From: Gracilinanus agilis
Taxonomy: Eukaryota
NCBI RefSeq assembly: GCF_016433145.1
Contig: NC_058135.1
Location: 280,144,930-280,208,929 of the forward strand
Direction: 5' to 3'
DNA length: 64,000 nucleotides
Positions 16,901 through 63,206 of the stretch are shown one piece after another (the first letter of the stretch is position 1; each line of letters begins with the position of its first letter). Made by a program: the position numbers and the translations under genes. A model generated the notes under the pieces. That model had not been told where the DNA came from. It was given only the letters and a program-made list of their open reading frames with translations, and made no database searches.

Positions 16901-17559
16901 TACAAGTATAGCCAGGGAAGATGCGGGATGATGGCAACATCAAATTAAGGTTGAAATACCTAGGCTTGCAGAGAAGGAACCAGTAGTGTAGGAGATTAAA
17001 GAGAGGAAATAATAGATGGGTTGAGCAAGGTCTCAAAAATCAAGACTCAGTACTGGCAAGGAGAAGGGCTACCCAGGAATGGAACAAAGGAAAAGAAAAG
17101 GTGTGTTCTGTGAAATAGAGAAGAAAATGGAAACTTAGAATTGAGATGGCTAGTTTCTCAGTTTTAAAAAAACAAACAATTCTCAAGAGAACCATTCATT
17201 AGGAATGCATTTAAAATGAAAAAATAAAAATATTTTAAATTAATAGTCACAATAGCAGCCAAAATACTAGAAAACAGGGGTGTAAATCCATTGTTGATAC
17301 AATTTGGAACTGCATACAAATAAAATCAAGTTAGCAAAAGTTTACTAAACATCTTCCTTGGGCTAGGCATTATAATGAGTGCGGGGAATAGAAAGAAAGG
17401 CAAAAAATAGTTCCTGACCTCAAGGAACTAAAAAAAGTTGATATGGGGTTGGGGGGAAGAGGAAAGCATGCAAATCTTTGTGTATAGACACATATCTACA
17501 CATATACTGACAAGATAAAATGAAGATAAATCTGAGAAAGAAAGCACTAAGATTAAGAA

Positions 17560-19200
17560 AAACCAGAAGGTGGGACTTTTTTCCTCCCAAATTAGTAAGC
17601 ACTGTGCTAAATGCTGGCTCTAAAGAAGGACAAAAGATAATCCAGTCTAATGGGAGAAACAACAAACAGTTATCTGCAAGATAAGTAGGAAATAATCAAA
17701 AGGAGGAAGGCACTTGATTAAGGGTGAAAGACTTCCAAAATAAGGTAGAATTTTAGCTGAAACTTTAAGGAAGTCAGGGAAGCTAGGAAGCAGAGGTGAG
17801 AAGGGGGGAGCATTCCAGGCACAAGGAACAGCCAGAGAAGGTATCCAGAGCCAACAAATAAACATTGCCAAGAGGCCATTGTCACTAAGAGGATGCATGT
17901 GTGTTAGATGGAGATGGCACAGGAGATGTAAGAAGACTGGGGAAGGGGTGGTACCTGCGTGCCCAAAGACTGAACACCAAGCAGGATTTTGTATTGGATC
18001 CTGGAAGTGATAAGGAATTTAGGAAAATTTCCACTTTGGCAGCTGAGTAAAGGATGAACTAGAGTGGGGAGACTTGTGGAAGGTAGCCCAACAGCAATGT
18101 TACTGCATTGGTCCTGGTGTGAGGGGATTGAGAATTTGCCCCATAGTGGTGGCAGTATGTGTGTGTGGGGGGGCCCAGCAAGGCATATTGGAAGTTTAAC
18201 GTGGCAGAATTAAAAGACTTTGATAACTAGTGGGATATGGGGTGAGATAGAGTGAGATAATAGAGGATAATACTTAGGTTAGGACTGGGTAAGTGGATTT
18301 GAGAATGATCAACAAAGAGATGATAATTGAATCCATGGAAGATTATGTAAAGTAGTATAAGAGAAGGCCCAGGACAGAGCCCTGAGGCCCATACGGGGTT
18401 AACTGGCATGACTTGGGGCATGATCAGGCAAAGAAGACTGAAAAGGAATGGTTAGGTGGATAAAAGAACCAGCAAAAAGCCATGTCATGAAACCTAGAGA
18501 AGACAGCATCAAGAAGAGAGTGATTGGGTGTGTTAGAAGCTACAAAGAAGTCAAGAAGGATGAGGATTGCATCAAAGCCACTGGATTTAGTGATTAAGAG
18601 ACCCTTGATAACTGAAGTGAACAATTTTGGTTGCATGTTAAGGTCAGGCAGCAGCAGGTTGTAGAGATTTGAAGCAGTGGGGGAATGGATTAAACTCCTT
18701 AAGGAGTTTAATCACAAAAGGGAAGGTGAGATGGGGATGATAGTGGAACAGAAAGATCTAATGAGGGGCTTTTGAGGCTGGAGAGACATGGGCATTTTTG
18801 TAGGGAAGCAGCCAATAATTGAGGAAAGATTGAAGATCAGTGAGACAATGGAGATGATAAATGGGGCAAATATTCTGGAGGAGATGGAGTGGAATGAGAT
18901 TTGTACAGGTAGGGAGTTTGCCTTTGCAAGGTAAAGAAGGATCACCTCTTCATGGGAGATGGGTGTAGGAGATAGTAGCAGAAGACATGATGTGTTGAGG
19001 AGGAAAGAAGTGGGAGTTGTGACCATGGTTTCAAGTTTGTTGTTGTTTCAGTTAAATATCAGGCAAACTTCTCAGCTGAGAGGGTGGAAATACAGGGAGG
19101 CAGGAAGAGGCTTAAGGAGAGATGAAAATTTATGGAAGCAAAGACTTGAAGGCAACCAGGACGAAGGTTTCAGGCATAGGAGATATCCTATAAAAATGCA
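17560..19200 (-). mobile_element. L2 LINE ORF2 fragment(s)
   Basis: VIKGLLITKSSGFDAILILLDFFVASNTPNHSLL resembles the L2 RT motif TNDLLxAKS...LILLDLSAAFDTVDH. The L2 3' region (AVPCAWNA) is at about 17800. Confidence 0.75.
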
Positions 19201-19329
19201 TGGAATTAAGAGAGGGAAGGTTTTTTTGCAAACAACAATAAGAAATCCAGAAGAATCATTCAGTTATACAAACCCTTTGGTCCTAGTAGTGATAGCACTA
19301 GGAGACCTACAACCAGTAAAGAGGGAAAG

Positions 19330-20017
19330 GACCCATGTGTACAAAAAATAAGCATAGTTCTTCATAGTGACTAATGACAAGAACTGGGAACTAAGGTTAT
19401 TCCCATCAATTGGGGAATAGCTAGAGGTATGTGAATGTAATAAAATATTATACCCACAAGAAATGATGATGAAATGGAGGTAAAATTCAGAGAAACTTTG
19501 GAAGACATTTATGTAATCCTGTAGAGGAAAGTGAGTATTACCTAGAAAATAGCAACAATAGCATAAAGGAAAACCAAGACTTCAGAGCTCATCAGTGCAA
19601 TGAGCAACCATGATTCCAAAACACCAGAGATGTTTATGGACTGCATCTCCTGAGGTTGAGGTGATGAACTCATGGTACAGAATGAGCCATATTTTCAGCT
19701 GATTTTGCTTTGTTCGTTTCCTCATCTGTACATTTGATGATAAGAATTTTGTTCTTCCTTCAGTGGGAGGATGGGGGAAGCTAAAGAACAGTGAGGGGGC
19801 AGCTGAGTGGCTCAATGGATTGAGAGCCAGGCCTAGAGACTGGAGGTCTTGGGTTCAAGTCCGGCCTCGGACACTTCCAGCTGTGTGACCTTGGGCAAGT
19901 CACTTGACCCCTACTGCCCACCGGGCTCAGACACTTCCCAGCTGGGTGACCCTGAACGACTGTGTGTCCCATTGCCTACTGGTTGTGGCCCTATGCTCCT
20001 AGAATGGAGTCCCAGGA

Positions 20018-31763: not shown

Positions 31764-32096
31764 GTAAGTAAATATAAATCTGAGTAAGTAAGAAATGCAA
31801 ACCCTGTGCTCAAAGGATCTGGAATGCATGTGAATCAGATCCTTCTTTGCAAACGTGTCATACTGACAGCTCCCCAGTTGCAAGGTAAGCGTTTTCTTGA
31901 CTGAATCAATCCTCTGTTTTGTCACTTCTCAGAAGTAGAGGACTAGACCACAATCCAATCCATTTCCTTCTAAATTCTTTCCCTTTTCACTTGAGCTCAG
32001 TCATATCGATAATCGTCCCTAGGATGTTGGTAGCACCAGCTTTTATCCTTTTTCTGTTCCCTTTTTGACAGACTGTCCTCTTGCTTCTCTCCTTAG

Positions 32097-32607
32097 GTGC
32101 GAGATCTGTGGATTCACCTGTAGGCAGAAGGCTTCCCTCAATTGGCACATGAAGAAGCATGATGCAGACTCCTTCTACCAGTTTTCTTGCAATATTTGTG
32201 GCAAGAAGTTTGAGAAGAAGGACAGTGTGGTGGCCCACAAAGCGAAGAGCCACCCGGAGGTGCTGATTGCTGAAGCTCTAGCTGCCAATGCCGGAGCCTT
32301 GATTACCAGCACAGATATCCTGGGCACTAACCCAGAGTCCCTGGCACAATCCACTGATTCCCAGGGCCTCCCCCTTCTGCCAGAGCCCTTGGGGAACTCA
32401 GCCCCTGCAGAGTGCCTCCTGCTAGATTCAGAAGGGATGCCCAAGGCATTCTGCAGTGGGGCGGAGCGGGTGAGCCTGATGGCAGATGGAAAGATCTTTG
32501 TGGGAAGTGGCAGCAGTGGAGGCACAGAAGGGCTGGTCATGAACACAGAGATTCTCGGGGCCACGACAGAGGTTCTGATTGAAGATTCAGACTCTGCTGA
32601 ACCGTAG
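32097..32607 (+). CDS. ZFP91: ZFP91 terminal coding exon 11 (ZF4, ZF5, C-terminus); E3 ubiquitin ligase zinc-finger protein 91
   Basis: ccttag|GTGCGAGATC... to TAG at 32605-32607. Encodes CEICGFTCRQKASLNWHMKKHDADSFYQFSCNICGKKFEKKDSVVAHKAKSH...TTEVLIEDSDSAEP. The ORF track's 32065 start reads into the intron. Confidence 0.98.
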
Positions 32608-38816: not shown

Positions 38817-39308
38817 GTTGAGTATCAGGGCCTGAACAAGAGCATCGACCTAGATTCTGTGGATGGGGTGCCGACGGCCAGCACGGACCGCTGGAGTGAG
38901 CTGACGGAGGCAGAACGACTACAAGAAAATCTCCAAGCTTATCGCACCTTCCACTTGCTCCTGACTGAGGTCCTGGAGGACCAGAGGGCACAGTTCACCC
39001 CCACAGAAGGAGAATTCCACCAGAAGATCCACAGGGTCCTACTCCAAGTGGCTGCCTTTGCTTACGAGATCGAGCAGCTGATGGGGCTGCTGGGACATCA
39101 GGCCCCGTCTCAAGAGACAGACAGGATGCCGGACAGCGACGGTCGCCAAACTTTCTTTGAAAAGAAACTGTGGGGCATGAAGGTGCTGCAGGAGCTCATG
39201 CAGTGGACAGTGAGGTCCATCCGTGACCTCCGTGTGATCTCTTCTCCGGGCCAGAACAGGGTCCCAGCCCATGGGAGCCAGCAGCAACCAGAGGCCCAGC
39301 CCATGTAG
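38817..39308 (+). CDS. CNTF: Ciliary neurotrophic factor, coding exon 2 (total 201 aa)
   Basis: gactag|GTTGAGTATCAGGGC... encodes VEYQGLNKSIDLDSVDGVPTASTDRWSELTEAERLQENLQAY...FFEKKLWGMKVLQEL...; stop TAG at 39306-39308. No signal peptide, as expected for CNTF. Confidence 0.98.
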   Translation, partial: VEYQGLNKSIDLDSVDGVPTASTDRWSELTEAERLQENLQAYRTFHLLLTEVLEDQRAQFTPTEGEFHQKIHRVLLQVAAFAYEIEQLMGLLGHQAPSQETDRMPDSDGRQTFFEKKLWGMKVLQELMQWTVRSIRDLRVISSPGQNRVPAHGSQQQPEAQPM

Positions 39309-41582: not shown

Positions 41583-42085
41583 TTAAATCGGAGATTAATG
41601 AGATCACAACTTCCATAGAATGTTAGAACTAGAAGAGAATTAAGATAGTAAAATCTCATCTGTTTTATAAAGGAGAAAGTTCCTGCCTAGAGAGGCTGCG
41701 AGTTGGCCCAACATTTCACAGTGAGTTGAGATCTCTTTGGAATTAGTGCCCAAATGTAAGAATTCCAATTCTGTTCCCTCCCACTCCCTTTCCATACTGC
41801 CTCTTAAAATGGAAGAGGAGCTAACCCTAACCATAGGAGAGCATGGAGTGCAGCAGAGTGGTGGGTTCAAATCTTGCTTCTAAAAATGGCTACCTGGTGA
41901 CCTTGAGCAAGTTACTTAACCCCTTCAACCTCAATCTCCCTGCATTTAAAATGAATGAAGGGGTTGATTTAGTTCTAGGGTCTCCTGAGCCAAAAGGAAA
42001 AGTTGGTTCTGACCTCGAGAGAATGTTTTATTCATTTTAATGAGCTCTTGGCCTGAATCTTAGTGCCTGCATCACCAAAAAAAAA

Positions 42086-42278
42086 TTTTTAACCCTTAAC
42101 TTCCTTCTTTGAATCAATACTGTGTCTGGTTCTTGGGCAGAAGAACGGTAAGGGGTAATGGGGGTCAAGTGACTTGCCCAGGGTCACCCAGCTGGGAAGT
42201 GGCTGAGGCCAGTTTTGAACCCAGGACCTCTTGTCTCTGGGCCTGGCTCTCCATCCACTGAGCCACCCAGCTGCCCCC
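42086..42278 (-). mobile_element. SINE1_Mdo-like SINE
   Basis: Full-length reverse complement. Confidence 0.88.
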
Positions 42279-42909
42279 TGTGTCAGCCAATATAATTGTG
42301 TCTATTCAGCTTGGAGCTGCTAACTGCCTAGAACATGCCACCCTCAGAATGTCAGAATGAATCACAATGAACAGCCTGCACTTCGCAGTTTTCTGTGCAC
42401 TTTCATTTCTAGGCCACATTCCCCCACCAAACTGATTCTCTTCGAGAGCCTGGGAGGATCCCCTCCTTGGACCCTTTGGGGCTCAGAAGTGAGGCTTCTC
42501 AGAGCTCAGATCCTAGGCTTTAGGGAGCAGAAACAAAAGAAAATGAAGTTTTTCTGCTTCTTCTCGGACTGAGGGCAGGACGTCTGGGAAACATTGTAGA
42601 ATGATTCTGTGCCTCTCCCCCTGCCCTGAACAGCCTCCGGAGGGCGGCCCAGTCCGGCCTGGCCCGATGGGAGTCCACCCTAAAGGAGTCAGTCATTTCT
42701 GAAGTGGAAAAACAAACAAGTGGGGCGTTGAGCATCTGGTGAGTGCGAGGAGGGAGTGGAACGTTCAAACCGTTTCTTCCCTTGGAAAGTGTAAGGGGAT
42801 AAACGGAGGTTCTTGTCTGTTGGCGAACTAAGAAGATGCAGAGTTTCTTATAAGCAAGGGAGAAGGATGGTTTCAGGCCCTCCTGAAACAAAGTCGAATG
42901 GGCTACCTG

Positions 42910-43115
42910 TTTTGTTTTTTTTAACATTGACCTTCCATTTTAGAAGCAATCCTGTGTATTAGTTCCAAGACAGAAGAGTAGTCGGGGCTAGACATTGGGG
43001 GTGAAGTGACTTGTCCAGGGTCACACAGCTAGGAAGTGCCTGGAGCCAGATTTGAACTCAGGTCCTCCCATCTTTAGGCCTGGCTCTCCATCCACAGAGC
43101 CACCCAGCTGCCCCC
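42910..43115 (-). mobile_element. SINE1_Mdo-like SINE
   Basis: Full-length reverse complement ending cacccagctgcccc. Confidence 0.85.
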
Positions 43116-43399
43116 CCTCTCTCATTCTTCAGCATTGGAACTAAGACAACCCAGTGACAGTAGTAGAGTCCAATTCTCTGCCCTGGTCTCTGTTGGGAGG
43201 CCTAACAGAGCCCTGGAAGCCTCCACTTAGTCATTTTATTTCTTCTGTGTGTCACGCTGACTCTCACCTGCTGCTCCCCCTTGGATGGGGGAAATGAGAG
43301 ATGAGGCAGACTCCGGGCTGCAGGCTCTTCTTCTAACCTAGATTTGGGTTCGGGGAGCCAAGACGCAGAGCAGATTCCCCCAGCTGTTCTTATCAAGCA

Positions 43400-46300
43400 G
43401 GGGCTGTGCAGCATCGGCTGAGCCCAGGAGGCCAGCCTGTTAAGAGCCCAGAGGACCAGGAGGAGAAGCCAGATTTCTCCTCAGACCCCTGAGGTCTCTC
43501 CAACTGCCCACCCACTCGTAGTTGGGCACAATTTCATGAGAGGCCGGGCCTTCCCGGCCAGAATCCTGGGGTCCAGTCTTGTAGCTCCAGGGCTGGGAAT
43601 CCTGGGAGGTGGTTCCTTGGCCTCTTCTCTGGGCAGGGTGAGATCTGCACACCACAGTCAGGGAGGGTCCAAATACCCCAGGCAGACCCGCCAGAGAACA
43701 GAAGAGGCCAGGAGCTTCCCAACCAGGGCCCAACCCCCCACCATCCCCCATCTCTAGAGAAGGCCAGCCTGGACTCTCCTCTTCCATCCCATCCTCCTCT
43801 CCAGGGACGAGGTTCCACCCTGCCAGACCTCAGGCTGGAGACTGACTGCCCCTGGAGCCATTGTTGGGGGAGCCTCACCCCAACACCCGCATGTGGGGGC
43901 ATTGTGAGCCCCAAGAGGGGTGGAGGAAGAAGGTAATGGAGGTGAGGGGGCGGCTCAGCCTTTAGAGGTTACTTTGTGACATCCATGGACACCCAGCCTC
44001 ATCTCTGAGCCCCTGAGGCCTGGGAGTCCTCCCTCCCCCCAGGGTGGCCAGGTCGGTGTGGCTGAAGTCCTGCCTAAACCCCTCTGGGCGCTTAGCTCCT
44101 CCTCAGGGGTTCTGCCCCACTCCCACCCTCGGCCTGGCTTCCTCTGGGACCCAGGAAATCACCTTATCGGCTCTGGAGAGTGGAGGCGGCTTATAGTGGG
44201 GGAAAGGACTAGGCCGGAGCCTGGCTCTGCCACCAGCGGGCCGCGTGACCTTGGACAAGTCACCCCTCTAAGGCTGGCACGACCCCTCCAGGCTCTGATT
44301 CACCTGTAAAAGGAGGGCGAAGGTGGAAAGACAACGCTGGAGCCTTTGGGTTTGCGGCTCATTTTTTTCTCACCACAGCCACGGGGGAGAGGCGCCAGGA
44401 TGACCCTCATTGACAATGCAGACACTGAGGCAGACAGACATGAAGTGACTTGGCCAGGGTCACACAAGTGTCAGAGGCCAGACTTCCATTCTGTCCTTCG
44501 TAACTCCGGCCCGGCACCCATCTACCAGCCTCCTCGCTTCGGTGGTGCAGAGCGGCCCCAACCTCCAGCTCGGCCCACCTGGACGGGGCCTCGGGGGAGC
44601 GACAGCGTCAGTGAGGCACCGCGACTTCCGCGGGAAAGTGGGGGTGGGGCGGGGGGGGGGTCTCTAGGGTCCGACCCAACTGACACTGCGCTGAGGCATC
44701 GCCGCCCGGAAGGGATGCAGAGCCGGGCAAAGCCGGACAGTTCCAGTCTGGCACCGCTAGAGGCCGCCTGAGCCTAGCTTACACGGGATGACGGCCGAGA
44801 GGAAGTGCGCGTGTGGTCTGGTCTCTGTCTGTCTCCTCCCCTCCCCCATTGCTCCCGTCTGCACGTCTGACGTCACTAAGCAGGTGCCGGGTTCGGGCCT
44901 CCTGGCTGCGTTGGTGGGGGCCGCCACTCTCCGTCTCCCGCGCAGATCTTGAGGCTCTGGGCAGCTCCCCGCAGACCACGAAGCCCAGCCTTTGAAGGCG
45001 AGCGCTGGGCTGACGGTCCACCGAGATCTGGATTCACATCTTGCCTCCAGCAGTTCCTAGATGTGATCACGGGCAAACCGTCTAACGTCTCTAAGCCTCA
45101 GTTTGTCCGTCTGTAAAATGAGGGCACCGAGGCCCGCCCTCTCCACCTCGCAGCGTGGTGCGGAAATCCTTTGGCTGCCCGCACGGCCATCCCGGAGCCA
45201 AAGGCCCACTTCTGGAAGGGGCAGAGCCGGGAATCTGCCTCTAACCCATGCCGTCATTTCCACACCTCTGTGTATCCCCTGTAGCCCCCGACGAGTTACG
45301 GGTTAGGAGAGGAGCCTCCTTCCCAGCAGGCTCGCCATTTTCCTTTTCTGTATTAGTCAGAAAATGTTCCTCAGCGTAGGTGCTCCCAGCGTGGAAAATC
45401 CCTCCACACACACAGAACAGCCATTGTTTTATATAGGATCCTGTCATACTTGCTGAAACACTAAGAGGTGCGGTGCTGGAGGAAGGATTCGAACTCGGGT
45501 TTGGGGCTTTTTTTAACCCTCACCTTCTGCCTTTCAATCCATACCATGTCTTGGTTCCGAGGCAGAAGGGCAGTCAGGGCTGGCCAACAGGGGTTCTGTG
45601 ACTCACCCAGGGCAGCCGCTAGAAAGGGTCCGAGGCCAGACTGGAACCCAGGCCCATTCATCCCTTCTTTTGATTCCATTTTTTTTTTTTAACTTTCTCC
45701 TTCCGTCTCAGCCTCAGGCTAACCGCTCCACTCCCTGGGCCCCAAGTCTGGTCTGTTCTGAGCCTGCCACCTGGCTTTACATCTGAAGTTAATGTGGGGA
45801 AGGCCCGGAGCGCTCACAGACAGGGACAGCCGTCCTTCCTCCGCGGCCTGCCACCGCCCGGCTAAGAAAGAGAAGCGCGGCTTCGACAGACGGCCCCACT
45901 CAAAACGGCTTCCCACACCGGCCTCCTCGGCTCTTTGGGCCTCAGTGTCTCCACTTGTAAAATGGGGATAAAATGTGCCCACACAGTCCAGAGCAGGGGG
46001 CCTCCCTCCAAACCAGGAAGGCCTGGGTTCAAGTTCTCCCCCTCCAATACTTGTGGTGTGACTCTGGGCAAATCTCTGCGCTCTGGGTTCTCTAGGGAAG
46101 GAGGGGAGCAGAGGGGAGGCAGCTAGGTCCTACAGGGGACGGAGTCCTGGGCCTGGAGGCTTCCGAGTTCAAATCCGGCCTCAGGCGCTTGCCAGCCAGG
46201 CAAGCCCAGGACAAGTCACTTCATTCTGTCTGCCTCAGTTTCCTCATCTGTAAAATGAGCCAGAGAAGGAAATGGCGAACCCCTCCAGGATCTTCACCAA

Positions 46301-47500
46301 AAAAACCCCAATGAGGTCCTACAGAGTCGGACCCACTGACCAGCGACAACAATAACCTGAGGGAGTTGGAAGGGAATTACCTCACAAGGGAGTTCTAACG
46401 AGATCCCAGATCCGCTCCCATCCCCCTCCCCACGCTGCTCTCAGTTGGAAATGAAATAATGTCTGTCAGGTCTTGGGTTATCTCCATCTCTATGGCTCCT
46501 CAGGACGCGTGGGTTGCTATGAGGACGCAGGCGGGAGCTTTGTGACGAGCCAATCAGCATCGGCACAAGGGCCCCCTCCTTTGAGTGGGCTCCAATCAGG
46601 CAAAAGGAACGGGAAGTCCTCCCGGGGTGTTTAACATATCATTAGCATATTATTTGCATGGTGGTTTCCCCACCCCCATATGGGAAACAAGGTGAATTCT
46701 GGGTAAAGTGGCGCTGCCAAAACAAACGAGCCCTTCCTTAGTAACTAAACAAGACAAGCGCTCCTGAAGACCCCCCTCCCCCCGAGTCTATCTAGCAGCA
46801 GCGCCCTTCCGGGCTCTCCCCCCAGCCAAAGGTCCCCTCCCTAAGGGACGGGTCAGCAATGCTTTGGAAGGCCCCAGGCTCGCCCCCACCGCAGGCCTCT
46901 TTATCCATCCCTAACTACCTCCATCCTGCTCCTTCTCTGCCCCAGCTCTGCAGGGAATGGCCCGAAGGCCAGGCTTCAGGCTTCCTTTTCTGCTTCTGGT
47001 CGGAAATGGAGAGAGCCCCGGGCAGGTGTCTGAGCCGCCAGTCAGTCACTGGAGAGGGTGTGCCGGGAGGCCTCGCACTGGCTCCGGCCTGGGGCTCCAT
47101 GAAGCCGTAGCAGGCCCAGCCGCCACCTGCCACAGCAGACCCGCTTCTCCAGGGGGCGCCTGCCCAAGCGGGTGAAGACTTCTGGGAGGGAGCAGAGGCC
47201 AGGAGGCAGCCAAAGCGGGCCCTGTGGAGCCCTTGGAGCCTGGTCAGACGTCCAAGACCCGCCCCTGCGCTCATCCCAACTTGGGCCTTGCCATAGACTT
47301 TGATGACTCTGGAAGAGAAAAGGAGGCCGAGGATTGTGCCTGGCTCTGCCGCACTTCAGTCCAGGGCAAGCCGGAGTCAAGATGTCGCCCCTTGATGCCA
47401 TGGTTGGTCCTTTCCCAAAAGGAAGGACAAAAGACCACACGGGATACTTCTTTTATAATGAGAGAAGGCTCGTTCTCTTATTTTCCTCTGCGAGTGTGTA
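43400..47500. promoter_or_regulatory. GC/CpG-rich island with promoter-like motif clusters and no identifiable coding gene
   Basis: High GC and CG density. AGAGGAAGTG 44798-44807, TGACGTCA 44868-44875, GGAAAATCCC 45393-45402, CCAAT 46550 and 46592, ATTAGCAT 46641-46648, ATTTGCAT 46652-46659. Confidence 0.6.
46119..46350 (+). mobile_element. CORE-SINE (MAR1-like) inside the CpG island
   Basis: gcctcagtttcctcatctgtaaaatgagccagagaaggaaatggcgaacccctccagg...acagagtcggac. Confidence 0.8.
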
Positions 47501-47684
47501 TCAGGAGCTTCCAGAAATAACGTGGTATAAAAACAAGGCATTTATACACCTTTTTAGGGCAGGAGGGGGGAGCGCGAGCTTCCATGGATTTTTCAGATCT
47601 CTTCCGGTTTTAAGATCCTTTTAGATTTCATTTTTATGGGGTTGGAGAAAGAGTGGAATATCACAGATGAATAATAATACTAAG

Positions 47685-47940
47685 GGGGGGGGCAGTTGGG
47701 TGACTCAGTGGGTTGACAGCCAGGTCTAGAGAGGGGAGGAGCAACTAAGTAGCACAGCAGATACAGCACTAGGCCTGAAGTTGGGAGGACCTGGTTCAAA
47801 TCTGGCCTCAGACACCTCCTAGCTGTGTGACCCTGGGCAAGTCACTTAACCCCCATTGCCGAGCCCTTACCACTCTTCTGCCTTGGAGCCAATACACAGT
47901 ACCAATTCCAAGATGGAAGGTGAGGGTTAAAAAAAAAAAT
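47685..47940 (+). mobile_element. SINE1_Mdo-like composite (two SINE heads, one tail)
   Basis: gggcagttgggtgactcagtgg... then a second head gcaactaagtagcacagcagatacagc..., ending aaggtgagggttaaaaaa. Confidence 0.8.
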
Positions 47941-56278: not shown

Positions 56279-58408
56279 TCATGCCAGACTGATTTGGGGC
56301 TCCTCCATAGTCATTCCTTGATCTGAACCCGAATATCTTACTGGCAATCCCAGATATTTCCTCTTGTTGTAGTATCTGATAATCCAGACAATCACCCCAG
56401 CAACAATCACCAGCGAAGTCACTAGGGTCATCCAGATTCCAGCAACAGCCCACATACTGGGTCCTGAATACTCAAAGTCCCCAAAGTCCAAGGCCTCTTG
56501 ACTGGCTCTGCCAAGGCTCGACCTCCTCGAGACCTTGTTGGCATCTGAATCCTCCAGGGAGCTTTCATTTAGCAGAGGCGGTCGGAGAAAGGGAGGCAGA
56601 TGAATGGGGGCCAGCTGTTGGGCAAATAGAGATCCTGCCTGGAGGCAATAGAGGATCTGGCACCCTTCACTGAGATAGGCTTGGTGCTGGCTGTAGCCAG
56701 GGGGGCATTTCATGGGGTACACCGTGGTGCTGGCCTGATAAAAGATCTCCTTCAGCATCCCGGGGCTCTGCCCCTTCAGGAGGCCAGCCAGAGGGTTGCC
56801 CACACGGCAGCTGAAGAAGCCTCCAAAGGGAATGGCAGAGGTTTTGCCCAGCTCATAGTTGCTGCTGACACATACTTTGAGGTCTACAAAGAGCACCAGG
56901 GGGTAGAAGTAGGTGGGGCACGTCTGCGCTTTCGTAAGCGGGTTCTTCTGAGTATTGGTGTACAGTCCCCCAAAGAGGAAGCCGGGCTTGGAGAGCTCGG
57001 GGCTCTTGGTGGGAGCGCACCAGTAGGCGGACACGCTCACCACGCTGGGGTGGAAGTAATCGCCGCAGATGTGCTTGCAGCACTGGAAGAGCCAGTAGCA
57101 GGAGTTGCACTGCTTCCGACACTCCATCTTGGGCACGTTGCTGCTCCGCAGCTCGCTGGCCAAGAGCACCTCGGTGTAGTTGGAGGGGCAAGAGGCGATC
57201 CCGGTCAAGGGGTTCTGGATACGGAAGGATCGGCAGAACGTCTCGGCACCCTTCCCAGACACTGGCTGGCACCTCTGGAAGACGCCCCCGAAGGTGAAGC
57301 GATTCTTCGCTTTCTCGCACGAGCCGTCGTCCACGTTGGCCTGGAAGTTGAAGTTGGAGGCTTTGGGCTGCAAGCAGCCCGGGAAGGTGTTGACCGCGTA
57401 GTACTGGTGGATGGCGTTCTGCACCGTCAGAGCCAGGCGCCTCACGGAGGGCACCGGCAGCTCCGGCAGCGCCTCGGGCGTGATGAAGAAGGGCAGGGGC
57501 AGTCCTGACCTGCCGATGGCCACCAGCCTGTTGCGGATGCTCTGCTGCCATTTCTGGAGGGTGATGCCAGGGTAAAAGGGCTCCCCGCCGTGGTTCTGGA
57601 TCTTGGAGCTCACCGTGTTCTTCATGTACTCCCACTGCTGTTGGTTCTGGACCTGCCCGGTGATGTTGGCTCCCACCTGGATGCGGCTGAAGAAGATGGC
57701 CGACGCGGAAGCGGCGATGCCCACCTTCTTGACGGAGCTGTCCTCCAGGAAGGCACGCCTCACCTGGTCCTCCTGCATCAGGCTGGCCCCGGCCTCCACC
57801 TCGGTGAGGACGTGGGTGCCGTAGGCCAGCACCAAGAGCTCGGCCCGGTAGTTGGCCTGCTGGCTGCGGTTGTTCTCCAGGTGCTCGCTGATGTCCAGCA
57901 GCTGCTGCCGGAAGGCTTCCTCCAAGACCCAGGGCGGCTGCGCGGCCAGCGAGTAGATGTGCTGGCGGGCCTGCACGCGGGCGGTGACCGTCTCGTCGTA
58001 CACGGAGTGCACCTTGCTCCGCTGGCAAGCGGCCGAGAATTTGCCGTTGAGGACGGACAGGAAGGAGGCCTCCGCGTTGATGGTGACGGCGAAGGCGTCG
58101 GTGTAGGAGCGCCAGTCCCGGATGATCTCCGAGTGGGTCTCCAGCACGCTCTCCCGGCGGGCCACCACGTGAGCCTGGTCCGGGATCAAGTACTCCCGGT
58201 CGTCCGTGACGCGGCACTGCGAGTAGTTGCGCCTCAAGACCGGCCCCAGCTCCAGGTTGCGAAGGTTGTCCCAGCCGCCTCCGGGCAGCACTCCGAGCAC
58301 CGGCAAGCTCGAGGCTGCTCCCTTGCAGGCCTGGAACCCGGAGATCCTGGAAGCCATGGCCGGCCTCAGCCCCAGCAGGATCAGCAGAGAGCCCAGGAGC
58401 AGGGCCAT
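56279..58408 (-). CDS. MPEG1/perforin-2-like MACPF pore-forming protein (divergent paralog), 709 aa, intronless
   Basis: Strong Kozak (ATCATGG) and a hydrophobic signal peptide. Family motifs: LPGGGWDNLRN, YGTH, GGEPFYPGITLQKWQQ, NFNFQANVDDGSC, FTFGGVFQ, FGGFFSC. A TM helix (56378-56455) precedes a short basic/Tyr tail. The family is certain; orthology to MPEG1 versus a paralog is not, so no symbol is given. Confidence 0.95.
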   Translation of the reverse strand: MALLLGSLLILLGLRPAMASRISGFQACKGAASSLPVLGVLPGGGWDNLRNLELGPVLRRNYSQCRVTDDREYLIPDQAHVVARRESVLETHSEIIRDWRSYTDAFAVTINAEASFLSVLNGKFSAACQRSKVHSVYDETVTARVQARQHIYSLAAQPPWVLEEAFRQQLLDISEHLENNRSQQANYRAELLVLAYGTHVLTEVEAGASLMQEDQVRRAFLEDSSVKKVGIAASASAIFFSRIQVGANITGQVQNQQQWEYMKNTVSSKIQNHGGEPFYPGITLQKWQQSIRNRLVAIGRSGLPLPFFITPEALPELPVPSVRRLALTVQNAIHQYYAVNTFPGCLQPKASNFNFQANVDDGSCEKAKNRFTFGGVFQRCQPVSGKGAETFCRSFRIQNPLTGIASCPSNYTEVLLASELRSSNVPKMECRKQCNSCYWLFQCCKHICGDYFHPSVVSVSAYWCAPTKSPELSKPGFLFGGLYTNTQKNPLTKAQTCPTYFYPLVLFVDLKVCVSSNYELGKTSAIPFGGFFSCRVGNPLAGLLKGQSPGMLKEIFYQASTTVYPMKCPPGYSQHQAYLSEGCQILYCLQAGSLFAQQLAPIHLPPFLRPPLLNESSLEDSDANKVSRRSSLGRASQEALDFGDFEYSGPSMWAVAGIWMTLVTSLVIVAGVIVWIIRYYNKRKYLGLPVRYSGSDQGMTMEEPQISLA

Positions 58409-58560
58409 GATGGTACCGGGCTGCCTCCCTACGAGCGCCCCGGGAGCCCGGACTAAGCCGTCCGGACTGAGTCTGCCTGGGGACTAGCGGGAGGCCCAGG
58501 CAAATATCTGGCCCCAGACTCCGCCCTCGCGATATCTTAGTCCATCCAGCCTGGGGCAAA
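57000..58560. other. CpG island over the 5' two-thirds of the MPEG1-like ORF and its proximal upstream
   Basis: Very dense CG dinucleotides by eye, in contrast to CpG-poor flanks. Not computed. Confidence 0.75.
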
Positions 58561-58597
58561 TTCAAGGCCACCCTCCCTCCGGACCCGTAAGAAAGGA

Positions 58598-58607
58598 GGG
58601 ATTTCCC
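58598..58607. promoter_or_regulatory. NF-kB consensus site upstream of the MPEG1-like ATG
   Basis: GGGATTTCCC matches GGGRNWYYCC, about 190 nt upstream of the start codon. Confidence 0.45.
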
Positions 58608-58889
58608 ATTCTCTGCCCAACCCCGGATTCCAATTGGAGACCAAAAGGCTCCACACTTTCCCTTTACAAAGGAGGAAACTGAGGCAAGGCCTAGGAGTAC
58701 GCCCAAGGGCACACACTGGGAGTGAATATTGAAAGCTAACGTTTCTCAAAGAATTGGACTGGAATCCTGGACCCAGAGCCAGGGCAGTGCATGGTGTGCC
58801 AGCCTCCCCGAGGCTCTTAAAAGAAGGGCATTACTCTGAGGGCCCTCCTAGCCATAAACAGAATCTAGCTTTCTCTCCCCCAGGGAAGA

Positions 58890-59345
58890 CACTTTTGTGG
58901 AGTCGTTTTACAGTCCTGTGAGACTCTCCATGACCCCATTTTGGGGTTTTCTTTTCTTTCTTTTTTTTTTTTTTAAATCCTCACCTTCCGTCTTGGAGTC
59001 AATACCGTGTGGTAAGGGCTAGGCAATGGGGGTCAAGCGACTTGCCCAGGGTCACACAGCTGGGAATTGTCTGAGGCCAGATTTGAACCTAGGACTTCCC
59101 ATTTCTGGGCCTGACTCTCCATCCACTGAGCTACCCAGCTGCCCCTTTGGGGTTTTCTTGACACAGATCCTGAATGGTTTCCTTCTCTAGCTCATTTTAC
59201 AGATGAGGAAACTGAGGCAAATGAGATAAAGAGACTTCCCAGAGTCACACCGCTGGTAAATTTCTGAGACTAGATAAGAACTTATGGAGATTTTTCCTCA
59301 TTCAAAGCCCTGTGCTCTATCCATTGGACCACCTAGCTGTCCCGA
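58890..59345 (-). mobile_element. CORE-SINE (MAR1-like) interrupted by a younger SINE1_Mdo-like copy (58950-59145)
   Basis: TTTGGGGTTTTCTT is duplicated on both sides of the inner SINE, and the outer element continues on each side. Confidence 0.85.
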
Positions 59346-60116: not shown

Positions 60117-60430
60117 TTCAGCTGTGTGACTCTGGGCAAGTCATTTGACCCCCATTGCCCACCCTTACCACTCTTCCACCAAGGAGCCAATACACAATAT
60201 TGACTCCCAAGACAGAAGGTAAGGGTTTAAAAATAATAATAGGGGGCAGCTGGGTAGCTCAGTGGATTGAGAGTCAGGCCTAGAGATGGGAGGTCCTAGG
60301 TTCAAATCTGGCCTCAGACACTTCCCAGCTGTGTGACCCTGAGCAAGTCACTTGACCCCCATTGCCCACCCTTACCAATCTTCCACCTATGAGACAATAC
60401 ACAGAAGTTAAAGGTTTAAAAAAAAAACAA
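60117..60430 (+). mobile_element. Head-to-tail SINE pair: 5'-truncated long-tail copy (60117-60235) and full short-tail copy (60243-60430)
   Basis: TSD AAAAATAATAATA at 60229-60241 and 60431-60443. Confidence 0.9.
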
Positions 60431-60437
60431 AAAAATA

Positions 60438-60473
60438 ATAATAATATATAATATATAATATATAATATATAAT
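60438..60473. repeat. AT-rich heptamer microsatellite (ATAATAT)n at a SINE tail
   Basis: ataataatatataatatataatatataatatataat. Confidence 0.8.
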
Positions 60474-60818
60474 TGGGCAATGTAGGAAATTTCTATCCAG
60501 GACAAGAAATATAGTGTAAATCTTTTGGAATGTACCACGTTGCAACTTTGGTAAGCTAGAAGAGAGCACGGGCACTATTTGGGGCTCCCTGACCTTTTTG
60601 GGCTGGAACACTGCAAAGTCACTTTCAGACCTCCATCATCATTTCATAATCTTGACGTTCCAAAGTAATTATAAACATCACAAAAGTCATTAGAAACTCA
60701 TTAACCCTTGACATCTCACAATATGTACACCTCAGTATGATCTGCTAACTTTAAATCACCATAAACGTTAGCTAAACATTTCATTTGCCTCGTGAACCTC
60801 AGTGAAAAAACTAGCAAC

Positions 60819-61025
60819 GGGGGCAGCTGGGTAGCTCAGTGGATTGAGAGTCAGGCCTAGAGACGGGAGGTCCTAGGTTCAAATCCGGCCTCAGACACTT
60901 CCCAGCTGTGTGACCCTGGGCAAGTCACTTGACCCCCATTGCCTACCCTTACCACTCTTCCACCTATAAGTCAATACACAGAAATTAAGGGTTTAAAATT
61001 AAAAAAAAATTAAAAAAAAAAAAAA
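60819..61025 (+). mobile_element. SINE1_Mdo-like SINE, short tail, young
   Basis: CpGs retained; TSD AAAAAACTAG at 60805-60814 and 61020-61029. Confidence 0.92.
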
Positions 61026-61589
61026 CTAGTAAGCTAGGAATCAAGAGATCTGAGTTCTAGTCCTCCCATGGACCTTTGGTGTGATATTTTAAAAATTGTT
61101 TTTTAATCAACAAAAATTCATCTCTAACCCCCTACTGAGAAAGAAAAAACCCATTGAAAAATACGTTCAGACCAAAATGTATAGCCAAGCAAAACAAATT
61201 CCAGTATTGGCCATGATAAACAAAAGTCTCAGTTCACTCTCTGGGCCCATTAGGGCAAAGTTACTACTTTCACTTCATCACATGGGCTCTAAGGTCACTT
61301 TCAACTCTCTGTCCTTTCGGCATTGACCAATGATAATGGAATTTAGCCAATTTTTTTCCAATCTACCATGTTTTAAAAATATTTTATTATTTCCCTTCAG
61401 TTACATGAAAAAAATTTTTTATCTTTATTTCTTTTTTAAGTTTGAGCCAAATTCTTATCCTCTGTCTGTCCTTCCTCTCTAACCTCCTCCCTCCCAGTAT
61501 CCCTCCCAGAGAAGGCAAGCAACTGGATAGAGATTGTACATGTGTGAGAGTGGAAAACATCTTTCCATATTAGTTACTTTATTTATTTT

Positions 61590-61792
61590 TTTAAATAAAA
61601 CCCTCACCTTCCATCTTGAAGTAAAAAATACTGTGTATTGGCTCCAAGGCAGAAGAGTGGTAAGGGAAGGTAATGGGGCCCAAGTGACTTGCCCAGGGTC
61701 ACACAGCTGGGAAGTGTCTGAGGTCAGATTTGAACCCAGGACCTCCTATCTCTAGGCCTGACTCTCCATCCACTGAGCTACCCAGCTGCACC
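61590..61792 (-). mobile_element. SINE1_Mdo-like SINE
   Basis: Full-length reverse complement. Confidence 0.88.
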
Positions 61793-62289
61793 CCCCCCCC
61801 CCCATATTAGTTATTTAATGAAAAAGAATGCAAACAAAAGAAAAGTGAAGAAATAAAGTGAAATGTAATCTATCTTGGTCTGTATTCAGACTCCATCAGA
61901 TGAGTGTTTTCCTTATGATTTTCTTTTAAAGGGCATTCATTGAAGAAGGAATCAAAGACTGATAGTGGGAATGCTGATAAGGAACAATAGGGGAGCTCCG
62001 CCTCAAATGGAAAAAAGAGTTGAAAATTCAGGATAAGGTGAGGAGATTCTAAGAGAGCTCCTAGCTGTCTTTCCTGTTCTGAGTTCAAGAACTGAAAGAG
62101 TTCATAGCTAACTTTAGAAAACTTGTAGAGAGCCTAAAAGCTGGTATGAGATGGAAGAGCAAATATCTTCGTAATGAAAACAAAAATAGTGCTAGTGGAG
62201 TGGGGCCGCGATGGTGATGACCAGGGAGGGAGAATAGAGTGTTCCAGCACCCAATTCCTGTAAACACAATATTCAATCAATATCTGTGA

Positions 62290-62500
62290 TTGCCTAAAAA
62301 AAGCCATTGGTGATGGTTAAGAGCCAACTTGACTTTTTGTCAAGAACAGATCAAAATTAACCCCATTTTTTTTTTCTGAAGTGTGACTAGATGGACAGAT
62401 CAGGAGAATAATGGAGTTCAAGTTTACTTGGATTTTAGAGAAATGTTTGATTAGGTCTTCCAGTCTCTTCTTGTGAATAAGATGGTGAAATCTGGGCTAT
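62290..62500 (+). mobile_element. L3/CR1 reverse-transcriptase fragment
   Basis: Translates VQVYLDFREMFD*VFQSLLVNKMVKSG, similar to the CR1 motif VYLDFSKAFDKVSHxxLVxKM. Confidence 0.7.
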
Positions 62501-62596
62501 ACTAAAGTCTAGTTAACTAAATTTTTAAGTGAAAAGAAGAGAAGGGAGGTGCATTTTCTCTTCTCTTTGGAGCCAAGATGGACAATCATAATCACT

Positions 62597-63206
62597 GGGG
62601 GCAGCTGAGTGGTTCTGTGGATGGAGAGCCAGGCCCAGAGATGGGAGGTCCTGGGTTCAAATCTGGCCTCAGACACTTCCCAGCTGTGTGACCCTGGGCA
62701 AGTCACTTGACCCCCATTGCCTAGCCCTTACCACTCTTTTGCCTTGGAGTCAACACACAGTATTGACTCCAAGACAGAAGGTAAGGATTTAAAAAAAAAA
62801 AAAGTGTTGGAAGTGGGAGCAGTTGGGTAGTTCAGTGGATTGAGAGCCAGGCCCAGAGATGGGAGGTCCTGGGTTCAAATTTGACCTCAACAACTTCCTA
62901 GCTGTGGTACCCTGGGCAAGTCACTTGACCCCATTGCTGAGACCTTACTGCTCTTCTGCCTTAGAACCAATACAATACTAAGATGGAAGGTAAGGGTTTA
63001 AAAAAAAAAGTGTCAGGGGCAGCTGGGTAGCTCAGTGGAGTGAGAGTCAGGCCTAGAGACGGGAGGTCCTGGGTTCAAATGTGGCCTCAGACACTTCCCA
63101 GCTGTGTGAACCTGGGCAAGTCATTTGACCCCCATTGCCCACCCTTACCACTCTTCCACCTATGAGACAATACACCGAAGTACAAGGGTTTAAAAAAAAA
63201 AGTGTC
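62597..63206 (+). mobile_element. Tandem trimer of SINE1_Mdo-like copies (62597-62803, 62815-63009, 63016-63201)
   Basis: Three full heads and tails, each tail followed by AAAAGTGT. TSD AAAAAAAAAGTGTC flanks the third copy. Confidence 0.92.

What the first reader, a model, noticed from the sequence alone, without database searches (positions are those of the whole stretch)
56279..58408. Intact, highly divergent perforin-2/MPEG1 paralog next to CNTF: a candidate second pore-forming effector
Seen: a complete 709-aa ORF with signal peptide, MACPF, EGF-like, P2, TM and tail, and no disabling lesion. Against human MPEG1 as I recall it, the motifs are kept but the intervening sequence is far more different than for ZFP91 or CNTF in this window. 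Established: human has one functional MPEG1, located beyond DTX4 rather than directly after CNTF. I recall reports of a second MPEG1 gene in marsupials, so its existence may be noted, but I know of no functional study. Inference: an ancient duplicate, probably lost in placental mammals, with several coordinated changes (next findings) suggesting different targets or activation.
Basis: partly seen in the sequence, partly recalled or inferred. Interest (0 to 1): 0.8.

Follow-up and report, generated by a model that had tools for sequence, protein, structure and literature searches.

The report
Opossum copy of second perforin-2 gene
This is an intact second perforin-2 (MPEG1) gene in an American opossum. 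It belongs to an ancient vertebrate paralogue already published as "unique MPEG1" and kept by many non-human mammals, so it is a real but largely known kind of gene.

Summary
Window 56279-58408 (minus strand) is an uninterrupted 709-codon ORF. It encodes a signal peptide, MACPF domain, EGF-like linker, P2 domain, one transmembrane helix and a short tail.

The window comes from Gracilinanus agilis. The same chromosome also carries a canonical 726-aa MPEG1 next to a DTX4-type gene, so this ORF is a second gene. It shares 42% identity with that canonical copy.

In the trees it falls with 100/99 support inside a clade of "MPEG1-like" genes. That clade holds caecilians, squamates, turtles, alligator, echidna, Monodelphis and laurasiatherian placentals. 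AU tests reject a marsupial-only duplication (p 1e-26) and a mammal-only one (p 8e-62). Rooting with invertebrate sequences places the duplication before the bony-vertebrate ancestor.

Chen, Yuan & Sun (2023) already described this clade as uMPEG1. The claim that it was lost in placentals is wrong, because bats, pigs, camels, ruminants, horses and shrews keep it.

The six-cysteine aromatic hairpin tip and the long P2 loop are traits of the whole clade and are ancestral. Specific to opossums are a stalk (CTT) shortened by about 13 residues and fast change in the stalk, membrane helix and tail.

Differences from Monodelphis avoid conserved columns (p 1e-11), which indicates purifying selection. 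Expression and dN/dS could not be tested.

The parts
56279..58408 (-). Complete single-exon ORF, 709 codons plus stop: didelphid uMPEG1 / MPEG1-like gene
   Evidence: It is identical to database protein P0001 on the 299,087,844-bp contig of GCA_016433145.1.
58352..58408 (-). Signal peptide, aa 1-19 (MALLLGSLLILLGLRPAMA)
   Evidence: By inspection and by alignment with the N-termini of homologues. No dedicated predictor was run.
57374..58351 (-). N-terminal region and MACPF domain, aa 20-345, with the YGTHV...AGA and GGxPFYPGITL motifs
   Evidence: Pfam PF01823 at 128-336. PDB alignment. Invariant columns G197 T198 H199 G207 A208 and others.
57284..57373 (-). Truncated EGF-like linker, aa 346-375
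   Evidence: Aligned to the EGF-like repeat of mouse and human MPEG1. Domain named as in Ni et al. 2020, read.
56573..57283 (-). P2 domain, aa 376-612
   Evidence: 6sb1 at E 3e-65. Model pLDDT about 85-93 with the long hairpin as strands E411-437 and E441-466. TM 0.90 to 6sb4_A.
57065..57121 (-). Tip of the P2 membrane-binding hairpin, aa 430-448 CRKQCNSCYWLFQCCKHIC: six Cys and the aromatic tip YWLF, four residues longer than in canonical tetrapod MPEG1
   Evidence: Translation. Alignment shows the feature in every L-clade protein, in Latimeria and in shark, and its absence from tetrapod canonical MPEG1. The mouse hairpin Y427-V452 with tip LKIF binds membranes (Ni 2020).
56708..56788 (-). 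Long conserved P2 loop, aa 541-567 AGLLKGQSPGMLKEIFYQASTTVYPMK, 11 residues longer than in amniote canonical MPEG1
   Evidence: Translation and alignment. It corresponds to the loop V538-P549 that is missing from the mouse P2 crystal.
56453..56572 (-). Shortened stalk (CTT), aa 613-652: it lacks the nearly invariant W...W strand segment
   Evidence: The distance from LPPF to the TM is 45 aa here and 49 in Monodelphis, against a mode of 58 in the other sequences. Alignment. Model pLDDT is below 50 at 614-653.
56375..56452 (-). Transmembrane helix, aa 653-678
   Evidence: Hydrophobic run MWAVAGIWMTLVTSLVIVAGVIVWII. Model helix 652-684.
56282..56374 (-). Cytosolic tail, aa 679-709, with the cationic start RYYNKRKY
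   Evidence: The tail is 48% different from Monodelphis.
57001..59000 (.). CpG-rich, GC-rich stretch over the 5' half of the ORF and the upstream region (GC 0.59-0.64, CpG o/e 0.63-0.71, against about 0.1 in the flanks)
   Evidence: GC3 is 0.83 overall and 0.89-0.97 in codons 1-500.
55385..55438 (-). First cluster of polyadenylation-signal hexamers, 841-889 nt after the stop: candidate 3' end
   Evidence: Motif scan only. No transcript evidence.
38859..39308 (+). CNTF exon 2 (synteny anchor)
   Evidence: Pfam PF01110 at E 2e-71. Human CNTF 1cnt at E 1e-56.
32065..32607 (+). C2H2 zinc-finger exon, taken as ZFP91 (synteny anchor)
   Evidence: Pfam zf-C2H2. The assignment to ZFP91 rests on its position before CNTF and was not tested by search.

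Best explanation
The ORF is the Gracilinanus agilis orthologue of the vertebrate MPEG1 paralogue that RefSeq annotates as 'MPEG1-like' and that Chen et al. 2023 published as uMPEG1. The paralogue arose before the bony-vertebrate ancestor. It sits between CNTF and a GLYAT-family gene, while canonical MPEG1 sits beside DTX4 on the same chromosome.

Shown here: the gene is intact, has been under purifying selection since the two opossums split, and keeps every domain of perforin-2.

Inferred: it works as perforin-2 does. It would be a type I membrane protein whose luminal ectodomain assembles into rings, binds a target membrane through the tip of the P2 hairpin, and inserts a MACPF beta-barrel.

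It differs from canonical perforin-2 in three ways:
- It has the clade's longer, aromatic hairpin tip with three disulfide rungs.
- It has the clade's conserved long P2 loop.
- In opossums only, the stalk is shortened and lacks the two beta-strands that lock neighbouring subunits in the mouse pre-pore.

By analogy with sheep and gar, expression is probably restricted to a barrier tissue.
For: - Intact ORF with all domains.
- A second, canonical MPEG1 lies on the same contig next to a DTX-type gene. Monodelphis has the same pair on one chromosome, and its L-type gene lies 6 kb from a GLYAT-family gene.
- Tree support: L tetrapods 99/94, L mammals 100/99, opossum pair 100/100. The L group including gar and coelacanth has 100 SH-aLRT support when rooted on invertebrate sequences.
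- AU tests reject a marsupial-only duplication (p 1e-26) and a mammal-only one (p 8e-62).
- The window protein carries the L-clade residue at 19 of 20 columns that are diagnostic between the two clades.
- Constraint: only 3 of 155 family-invariant columns differ between the two opossum proteins, against 121 of 529 other columns (Fisher p 1e-11). MACPF differs at 11% and EGF at 7%, against 45-48% for stalk and tail.
- The clade, its synteny and its tissue-restricted expression are published.
- The roles of the hairpin and the CTT come from Ni et al. 2020.
Against: - There is no transcript evidence. The runs that hold the ORF also hold an intergenic control stretch, so they are DNA. The single read-laying run failed.
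- The protein evolves about 3.4 times faster than the canonical paralogue in the same species pair: 17.9% against 5.2% differences. That fits partial relaxation of constraint as well as adaptation.
- No member was seen in eight annotated Australidelphian proteomes, so the gene is dispensable in marsupials.
- The MACPF half of the model has low confidence.
- Pore formation has never been shown for any uMPEG1.
Confidence: 0.62

Rival explanations
1. It is a relic. The ORF is still open but the gene is silent or under relaxed constraint, on its way to the loss already seen in other marsupials and in most placental orders.
For: - Protein change is 3.4-fold faster than in the canonical paralogue.
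- Stalk, TM and tail differ by 36-48% between two didelphids.
- The CTT segment that is conserved from shark to mammal is deleted.
- No Australidelphian member appears in the protein search.
- Cetacean members are truncated, at 566-654 aa.
- No RNA evidence.
Against: - Both opossums keep exactly 709 codons, alignable to the last residue.
- Substitutions avoid conserved columns about 12-fold.
- All invariant cysteines and MACPF motifs are kept.
- Changes are split evenly between the two lineages, 53 and 52, with no compositional drift.
- Strong coding periodicity: GC3 0.83 against GC2 0.44.
Confidence: 0.15
2. It is functional but no longer an autonomous pore-former. It would act, for example, as a membrane-anchored regulator or receptor, or mainly through its cationic tail, with the ectodomain retained for binding.
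For: - The CTT inter-subunit lock is lost and the TM and tail are heavily changed.
- The TMH2 glycan sequon NRT of canonical proteins reads NTV across the whole clade.
- Chen et al. report bactericidal activity of peptides from the tail alone.
Against: - The MACPF core and the TMH regions are the best-conserved parts.
- The hairpin tip keeps its hydrophobic, aromatic character.
- In mouse, deleting the CTT did not affect lipid binding.
Confidence: 0.15
3. It is the orthologue of human MPEG1, or a recent duplicate specific to marsupials or mammals.
For: RefSeq names the Monodelphis protein plain 'macrophage-expressed gene 1 protein'.
Against: - A canonical gene beside a DTX-type gene exists in the same genome.
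- The AU tests give p 1e-26 and p 8e-62.
- Identity to the canonical copy is 42%, against 53-56% to pig, echidna and lizard L-type proteins.
Confidence: 0.01

Closest known systems
uMPEG1 ('unique MPEG1') of Chen, Yuan & Sun 2023, Comput Struct Biotechnol J 21:5818 (PMC10781884); RefSeq 'macrophage-expressed gene 1 protein-like'
   Same: - Same clade: it groups with echidna, caecilian Rhinatrema, turtles, ruminants and gar uMPEG1.
- It coexists with the generic MPEG1 on one chromosome, in the ZFP91...DTX4 neighbourhood.
- It is less conserved than the generic gene.
   Different: - No marsupial is named in the paper's main text, and its supplement could not be read.
- The opossum proteins have a stalk 9-13 residues shorter that lacks the conserved W...W segment, and very divergent TM and tail.
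- The paper's main text never uses 'hairpin' or 'cysteine' and names the P2 domain only in its introduction, so the P2 hairpin and loop hallmarks noted here are not described there.
- Expression in opossum is unknown.
Canonical perforin-2 / MPEG1 (human and mouse; structures 6U23, 6SB3, 6SB5, 8A1D)
   Same: The domain order is the same: signal peptide, MACPF, EGF-like, P2, CTT, TM, tail. The MACPF signature motifs, the P2 fold and a hydrophobic hairpin tip are shared.
   Different: - 42% identity.
- The hairpin tip is four residues longer and has two extra cysteines: CNSCYWLFQCC against mouse CT----LKIFC.
- The P2 loop is 11 residues longer and is conserved.
- The TMH2 N-glycan sequon is absent.
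- The CTT strands are missing.
- The lysine cluster of the tail is reduced: RYYNKRKY against RKYKKKEY.
- The genomic position is beside CNTF and GLYAT, not DTX4.
Gracilinanus agilis canonical MPEG1 (XP_044536559.1, P0122)
   Same: Same genome, same chromosome and same architecture.
   Different: It is 726 aa, 94.8% identical to its Monodelphis orthologue and 70% identical to primate MPEG1. It lies 6.7 kb from a DTX4-type gene, so it is the true orthologue of human MPEG1.

Membership tests
MPEG1 / perforin-2 family | MACPF domain with signature motifs | tested here: met
   PF01823 at 77.7 bits against a cut-off of 21.5. YGTHV and GGxPFYPGITL fall in invariant columns.
MPEG1 / perforin-2 family | P2 domain (three-fold beta-prism with a long hairpin) after an EGF-like linker | tested here: met
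   6sb1 at E 3e-65 over residues 344-617. Model against 6sb4_A gives TM 0.90 and rmsd 2.6 A. Strands 411-437 and 441-466.
MPEG1 / perforin-2 family | Type I topology: signal peptide, single TM helix, short cationic cytosolic tail | tested here: met
   Sequence inspection, alignment and model helix 652-684. No signal-peptide predictor was available.
MPEG1 / perforin-2 family | CTT strands that pair with the neighbouring subunit's P2 hairpin (Ni 2020) | tested here: not met
   The W...W segment is deleted. The stalk is 45 aa against a mode of 58. This defines the pre-pore architecture rather than family descent.
MPEG1 / perforin-2 family | Ring assembly and acid-triggered pore formation | not testable with these tools
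   Needs recombinant protein, liposomes and EM or AFM.
uMPEG1 / MPEG1-like paralogue clade | Groups in the mixed-class clade apart from the class-wise generic MPEG1 | tested here: met
   L tetrapods 99/94, L mammals 100/99. AU tests. Outgroup rooting. L state at 19 of 20 diagnostic columns.
uMPEG1 / MPEG1-like paralogue clade | Coexists with a generic MPEG1 on the same chromosome, in the ZFP91...DTX4 region | tested here: met
   P0001 and P0122 lie on the same contig of GCA_016433145.1, with a DTX-type neighbour beside P0122. ZFP91-like and CNTF exons are in the window.
uMPEG1 / MPEG1-like paralogue clade | Lower conservation than the generic gene | tested here: met
   82.1% against 94.8% identity for the same species pair. 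Distance from the mammalian MRCA to the tips is 0.74 against 0.31.
uMPEG1 / MPEG1-like paralogue clade | Strongly tissue-restricted expression | not testable with these tools
   No RNA run holds the stretch, and the runs that do hold it are DNA. The read-laying run failed.
1:1 orthologue of human MPEG1 | Adjacent to DTX4 and nested among canonical marsupial and placental MPEG1 | tested here: not met
   The DTX-type neighbour belongs to the other gene. The tree and the AU tests place this gene elsewhere.

The most novel reading that the evidence does not exclude
Among marsupials only American opossums retain uMPEG1. Their version has lost the CTT beta-strand lock and is remodelling its stalk, membrane helix and tail at a near-neutral or adaptive rate, while the pore-forming core is conserved. 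It could be a specialised barrier-tissue pore-former, for example of the yolk-sac placenta as in sheep placenta, whose assembly or activation differs from canonical perforin-2.
Probability: 0.2. Interest if true: 0.5.

Novelty: new member of a known kind. Interest (0 to 1): 0.3.

Why it matters
Perforin-2 is usually treated as a single-copy mammalian gene, because human and mouse have one. The opossum gene is one more demonstration that a second lineage, older than bony vertebrates, persists in monotremes, didelphid marsupials and laurasiatherian placentals.

The comparison also shows that the well-studied canonical protein is the derived form at two places in the P2 domain. One is the membrane-binding hairpin tip and the other is a loop. 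This gives structural biologists a natural variant set for asking what the hairpin tip, the loop and the CTT lock contribute to target choice and to the pre-pore-to-pore transition.

For the scan itself, the finding is real but mostly already explained by a 2023 paper and by RefSeq annotation.

Tried and rejected
- **RNA evidence.** A search for RNA runs found only runs at the 0.1 background share, plus X16-X18. An intergenic control at 60400-62529 is held by X16-X19, which include those three holders. They are therefore DNA and say nothing about expression.
- **dN/dS.** Monodelphis and Gracilinanus chromosome files are too large to be served. No codon alignment was possible, and I used a protein-level constraint test instead.
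- **Pig transcripts.** The 2.9-5.2 kb Logan and ENA contigs that carry the pig L-type ORF are collinear with the genome. They cannot distinguish RNA from DNA.
- **Synteny in pig and echidna.** There is no CNTF or ZFP91 match within 10 kb of the L-type gene in either species. This is uninformative, because CNTF is 17 kb away in this window.
- **GC-biased gene conversion as the cause of fast change.** Derived replacements show no bias towards G/A/R/P residues. High GC3 is shared with the pig and echidna L-type genes.
- **Other searches.** Rfam found nothing in the window. ORFs in the GC-rich stretch at 42-48 kb have no Pfam match. Literature searches for marsupial or opossum MPEG1 paralogues found no dedicated study.
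- **Trees.** The careful outgroup-rooted tree did not finish in time, so the quick tree is reported.
Full report
**1. The observation**

One search lists an ORF at 56279..58408 on the minus strand, 709 aa, from ATG to stop. An in-frame stop lies 78 nt upstream of the ATG, and the first polyadenylation hexamers lie 841-889 nt after the stop.

The domains are all present:
- Pfam finds a MACPF domain at residues 128-336, 77.7 bits against a cut-off of 21.5.
- The solved ectodomains of human and mouse MPEG1/perforin-2 match residues 23-618 at E about 1e-180. The isolated mouse P2 domain (6sb1) matches residues 344-617 at E 3e-65.
- An AlphaFold2 model built on a 59-sequence alignment has mean pLDDT 64.6. 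It is poor over the N-terminal MACPF half and confident (85-93) over residues 370-600. It shows the long two-stranded hairpin at 411-437 and 441-466, a disordered stalk at 614-653 and a helix at 652-684.
- Foldseek returns the MPEG1 pre-pores at E 1e-46. The mouse P2 crystal 6sb4_A superposes with TM 0.90 and rmsd 2.6 A.

**2. Which genome, and is there a second MPEG1?**

The window protein is database entry P0001, on a contig of 299,087,844 bp. I searched with platypus MPEG1 as query. This returned the RefSeq 'macrophage-expressed gene 1 protein' of Gracilinanus agilis (P0122, 726 aa) on a contig of the same length.

Look-ups place both proteins on the same contig of assembly GCA_016433145.1. 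P0122 lies 6.7 kb from a gene whose product has WWE, RING and DTC domains, which is a DTX4-type gene. P0122 is therefore the positional orthologue of human MPEG1, and the window gene is an additional copy.

Monodelphis has the same pair on one 311-Mb chromosome. Its canonical protein P0226 falls in the same 90% cluster as P0122. Its L-type protein is P0002.

In the window, CNTF exon 2 lies at 38859-39308 (+) and a C2H2 zinc-finger exon, consistent with ZFP91, at 32065-32607 (+). In Monodelphis a GLYAT-family gene ends about 6 kb upstream of the L-type gene on the same strand. The order is ZFP91 >, CNTF >, < MPEG1-like, < GLYAT. This is the interval that holds no MPEG1 gene in human, according to established knowledge of 11q12 and not tested here.

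**3. Phylogeny**

The best hits to the window protein are listed below.

| Group | Identity to the window protein |
|---|---|
| Monodelphis L-type | 80-82% |
| Echidna 'MPEG1-like' | 56-62% |
| Squamate, turtle and alligator 'MPEG1-like' | 54-58% |
| Laurasiatherian placental 'MPEG1-like' | 49-58% |
| Canonical MPEG1 of any tetrapod, including the same genome's P0122 | 40-48% |

The placental members are bats, pig and peccary, camel, ruminants, cetaceans, hippo, horse, shrew and hedgehog.

A careful ML tree of 63 sequences (LG+C20+F+G4) gives these supports:
- opossum L pair, 100/100;
- L therians, 100/99;
- L mammals, 100/99;
- L tetrapods, 99/94;
- canonical tetrapods, 100/100.

The AU test rejects holding all marsupial sequences together (delta lnL 304, p 1e-26). 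It also rejects holding all mammalian sequences together (delta lnL 426, p 8e-62).

I obtained invertebrate outgroups (crinoid, two molluscs, sponge) from the representative search and named them by cluster look-up. With these, a quick tree gives 100 SH-aLRT support to the group coelacanth + gar 'like' copy + tetrapod L. Sharks, ray-finned canonical copies and tetrapod canonical copies form an unresolved base.

Gar has both types, so the duplication predates the bony-vertebrate ancestor. The outgroup branches are very long, so the exact root position is not secure. The L bipartition does not depend on the root.

**4. This clade is already published**

Chen, Yuan & Sun 2023 (PMC10781884) describe a 'unique MPEG1' (uMPEG1) clade. 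It comprises 71 species of bony fishes, amphibians, reptiles and mammals, and it is separate from the class-wise 'generic' MPEG1. It always coexists with gMPEG1, usually on the same chromosome, in conserved synteny with DTX4 and ZFP91. The paper names sheep, echidna, green turtle, Rhinatrema and gar.

Sheep uMPEG1 mRNA is almost exclusive to placenta, and gar uMPEG1 peaks in gill. Cationic peptides from the tail kill bacteria.

My L clade contains the same echidna and Rhinatrema genes, together with ruminants, turtles and gar, so the window gene is a uMPEG1. The paper's main text names no marsupial, and its supplement is not held. No other paper uses the term, and no paper on opossum MPEG1 paralogues was found.

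**5. What distinguishes the protein**

(a) Clade-wide features
- The tip of the P2 hairpin reads ECRKQCNSCYWLFQCCKHIC (aa 429-448). Mouse reads ECKKKCT----LKIFCKTVC. The L form is four residues longer, has six cysteines rather than four, and has an aromatic tip.
- Ni et al. 2020 showed that the mouse hairpin (Y427-V452, tip LKIF) is braced by two disulfides and is solely responsible for binding negatively charged membranes.
- A second feature is the loop AGLLKGQSPGMLKEIFYQASTTVYPMK (aa 541-567). It is 11 residues longer than in amniote canonical MPEG1 and highly conserved within the clade. The corresponding mouse loop, V538-P549, is disordered in the crystal.
- Both features also occur in coelacanth and shark MPEG1. 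They are ancestral, and canonical tetrapod MPEG1 is the form that lost them.
- The canonical TMH2 sequon (N-R-T) reads N-T-V in the L clade.
- The window protein carries the L-clade residue at 19 of 20 diagnostic columns.

(b) Opossum-specific features
- The stalk between the LPPF motif and the membrane helix is 45 aa here and 49 aa in Monodelphis. Its modal length in the other sequences is 58 aa. The only other short stalks are those of the shrew L copy and of two turtle models.
- The missing part is the segment with two nearly invariant tryptophans (echidna AWVRLQGTNRWRP).
- In the mouse pre-pore the CTT forms two strands that pair with the neighbouring subunit's P2 hairpin. That these strands are the W...W segment is my inference from the alignment.
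- The conserved SGGAxAG start of the membrane helix and the RRYKKRxYQE tail are also altered.

**6. Selection**

Across the same species pair the L protein differs at 126 of 702 aligned sites. The canonical protein differs at 38 of 726, so the L protein changes 3.4 times faster.

The differences are far from random:
- 3 of 155 columns that are at least 95% conserved across the family differ.
- 121 of 529 other columns differ (Fisher p 1e-11).

| Domain | Sites differing between the two opossums |
|---|---|
| MACPF | 11% |
| EGF-like | 7% |
| P2 | 18% |
| Stalk | 45% |
| TM | 36% |
| Tail | 48% |

Changes are split 53 to 52 between the two lineages, with no bias towards residues encoded by GC-rich codons.

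The ORF has GC3 0.83 in flanks of GC 0.43-0.45. The pig and echidna L genes show the same, with GC3 0.80 and 0.86.

These results indicate purifying selection on the pore-forming core since the two didelphids diverged, and very weak or diversifying selection on the C-terminal third. A true dN/dS could not be computed, because no Monodelphis DNA was served.

**7. Distribution**

Among the best 120 hits, the placental members of the clade are all laurasiatherian. The primate, rodent, carnivore, afrotherian and xenarthran proteins recovered are canonical.

The annotated MPEG1 proteins of eight Australidelphians are all canonical. Six of them (brush-tail possum, koala, wombat, devil, antechinus, dunnart) plus bilby share one 90% cluster, and monito del monte has a separate canonical entry. 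None appears among the L-type hits.

I infer that the gene was lost or pseudogenised in Australidelphia. That rests on annotation only.

**8. Expression**

Expression was not determined. The runs that hold the ORF also hold an intergenic control, so they are DNA. The CpG-rich 5' half, with CpG o/e 0.63-0.71, is compatible with an active promoter but is not evidence of one.

**9. Verdict**

The feature is real and correctly delimited. Calling it 'a second, ancient paralogue' is right. Calling it 'lost in placentals', unstudied, or marked by opossum-specific coordinated changes is mostly wrong.

It is a new, marsupial member of a known and published paralogue clade. It has a lineage-specific shortened stalk that may be of interest to structural biologists. 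Interest is modest.

I confirmed the sequence and showed that the feature is clade-wide and ancestral.

Noticed in passing
window 44001-46000 (wider: 42000-48000): A GC-rich stretch (GC 0.56-0.64, CpG o/e about 0.56) lies between CNTF and the MPEG1-like gene. The surrounding DNA is AT-rich and CpG-poor. ORFs of 115-141 aa here have no Pfam match. It could be an unannotated promoter or a non-coding transcript.
   Followed up: partly
window 62597-63175: A tandem array of 2.8 copies of a 200-bp unit. The unit begins like a tRNA-derived SINE (GGGGCAGCTGGGTAGTTCAGTGG...GGTTCAAATCTGGCC).
   Followed up: no
window 16001-20000: Strong strand asymmetry (GC skew 0.33-0.36, AT skew 0.15-0.23) inside what should be the ZFP91 region. 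This may be a purine-rich repeat or a long strand-biased element.
   Followed up: no
window 56279-58408; L001:10001-12190; L005:10001-12193: The L-type genes of opossum, pig and echidna all have GC3 of 0.80-0.86 in flanks of GC 0.43-0.48. In the opossum, GC3 falls from 0.97 to 0.53 along the ORF from 5' to 3'.
   Followed up: partly
proteins P0043 (Sorex), P0050, P0057, P0071, P0083 (cetaceans), P0085 (hippo): Other mammalian members of the clade look eroded. The shrew copy has a stalk of only 31 aa, and the cetacean and hippo models are 514-654 aa long. This suggests repeated independent decay of the paralogue.
   Followed up: no
whole clade: Echidna has an annotated L-type gene. Only the canonical gene was seen for platypus, and no bird L-type gene appeared among the best hits. 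These would be further lineage-specific losses if confirmed at the DNA level.
   Followed up: no
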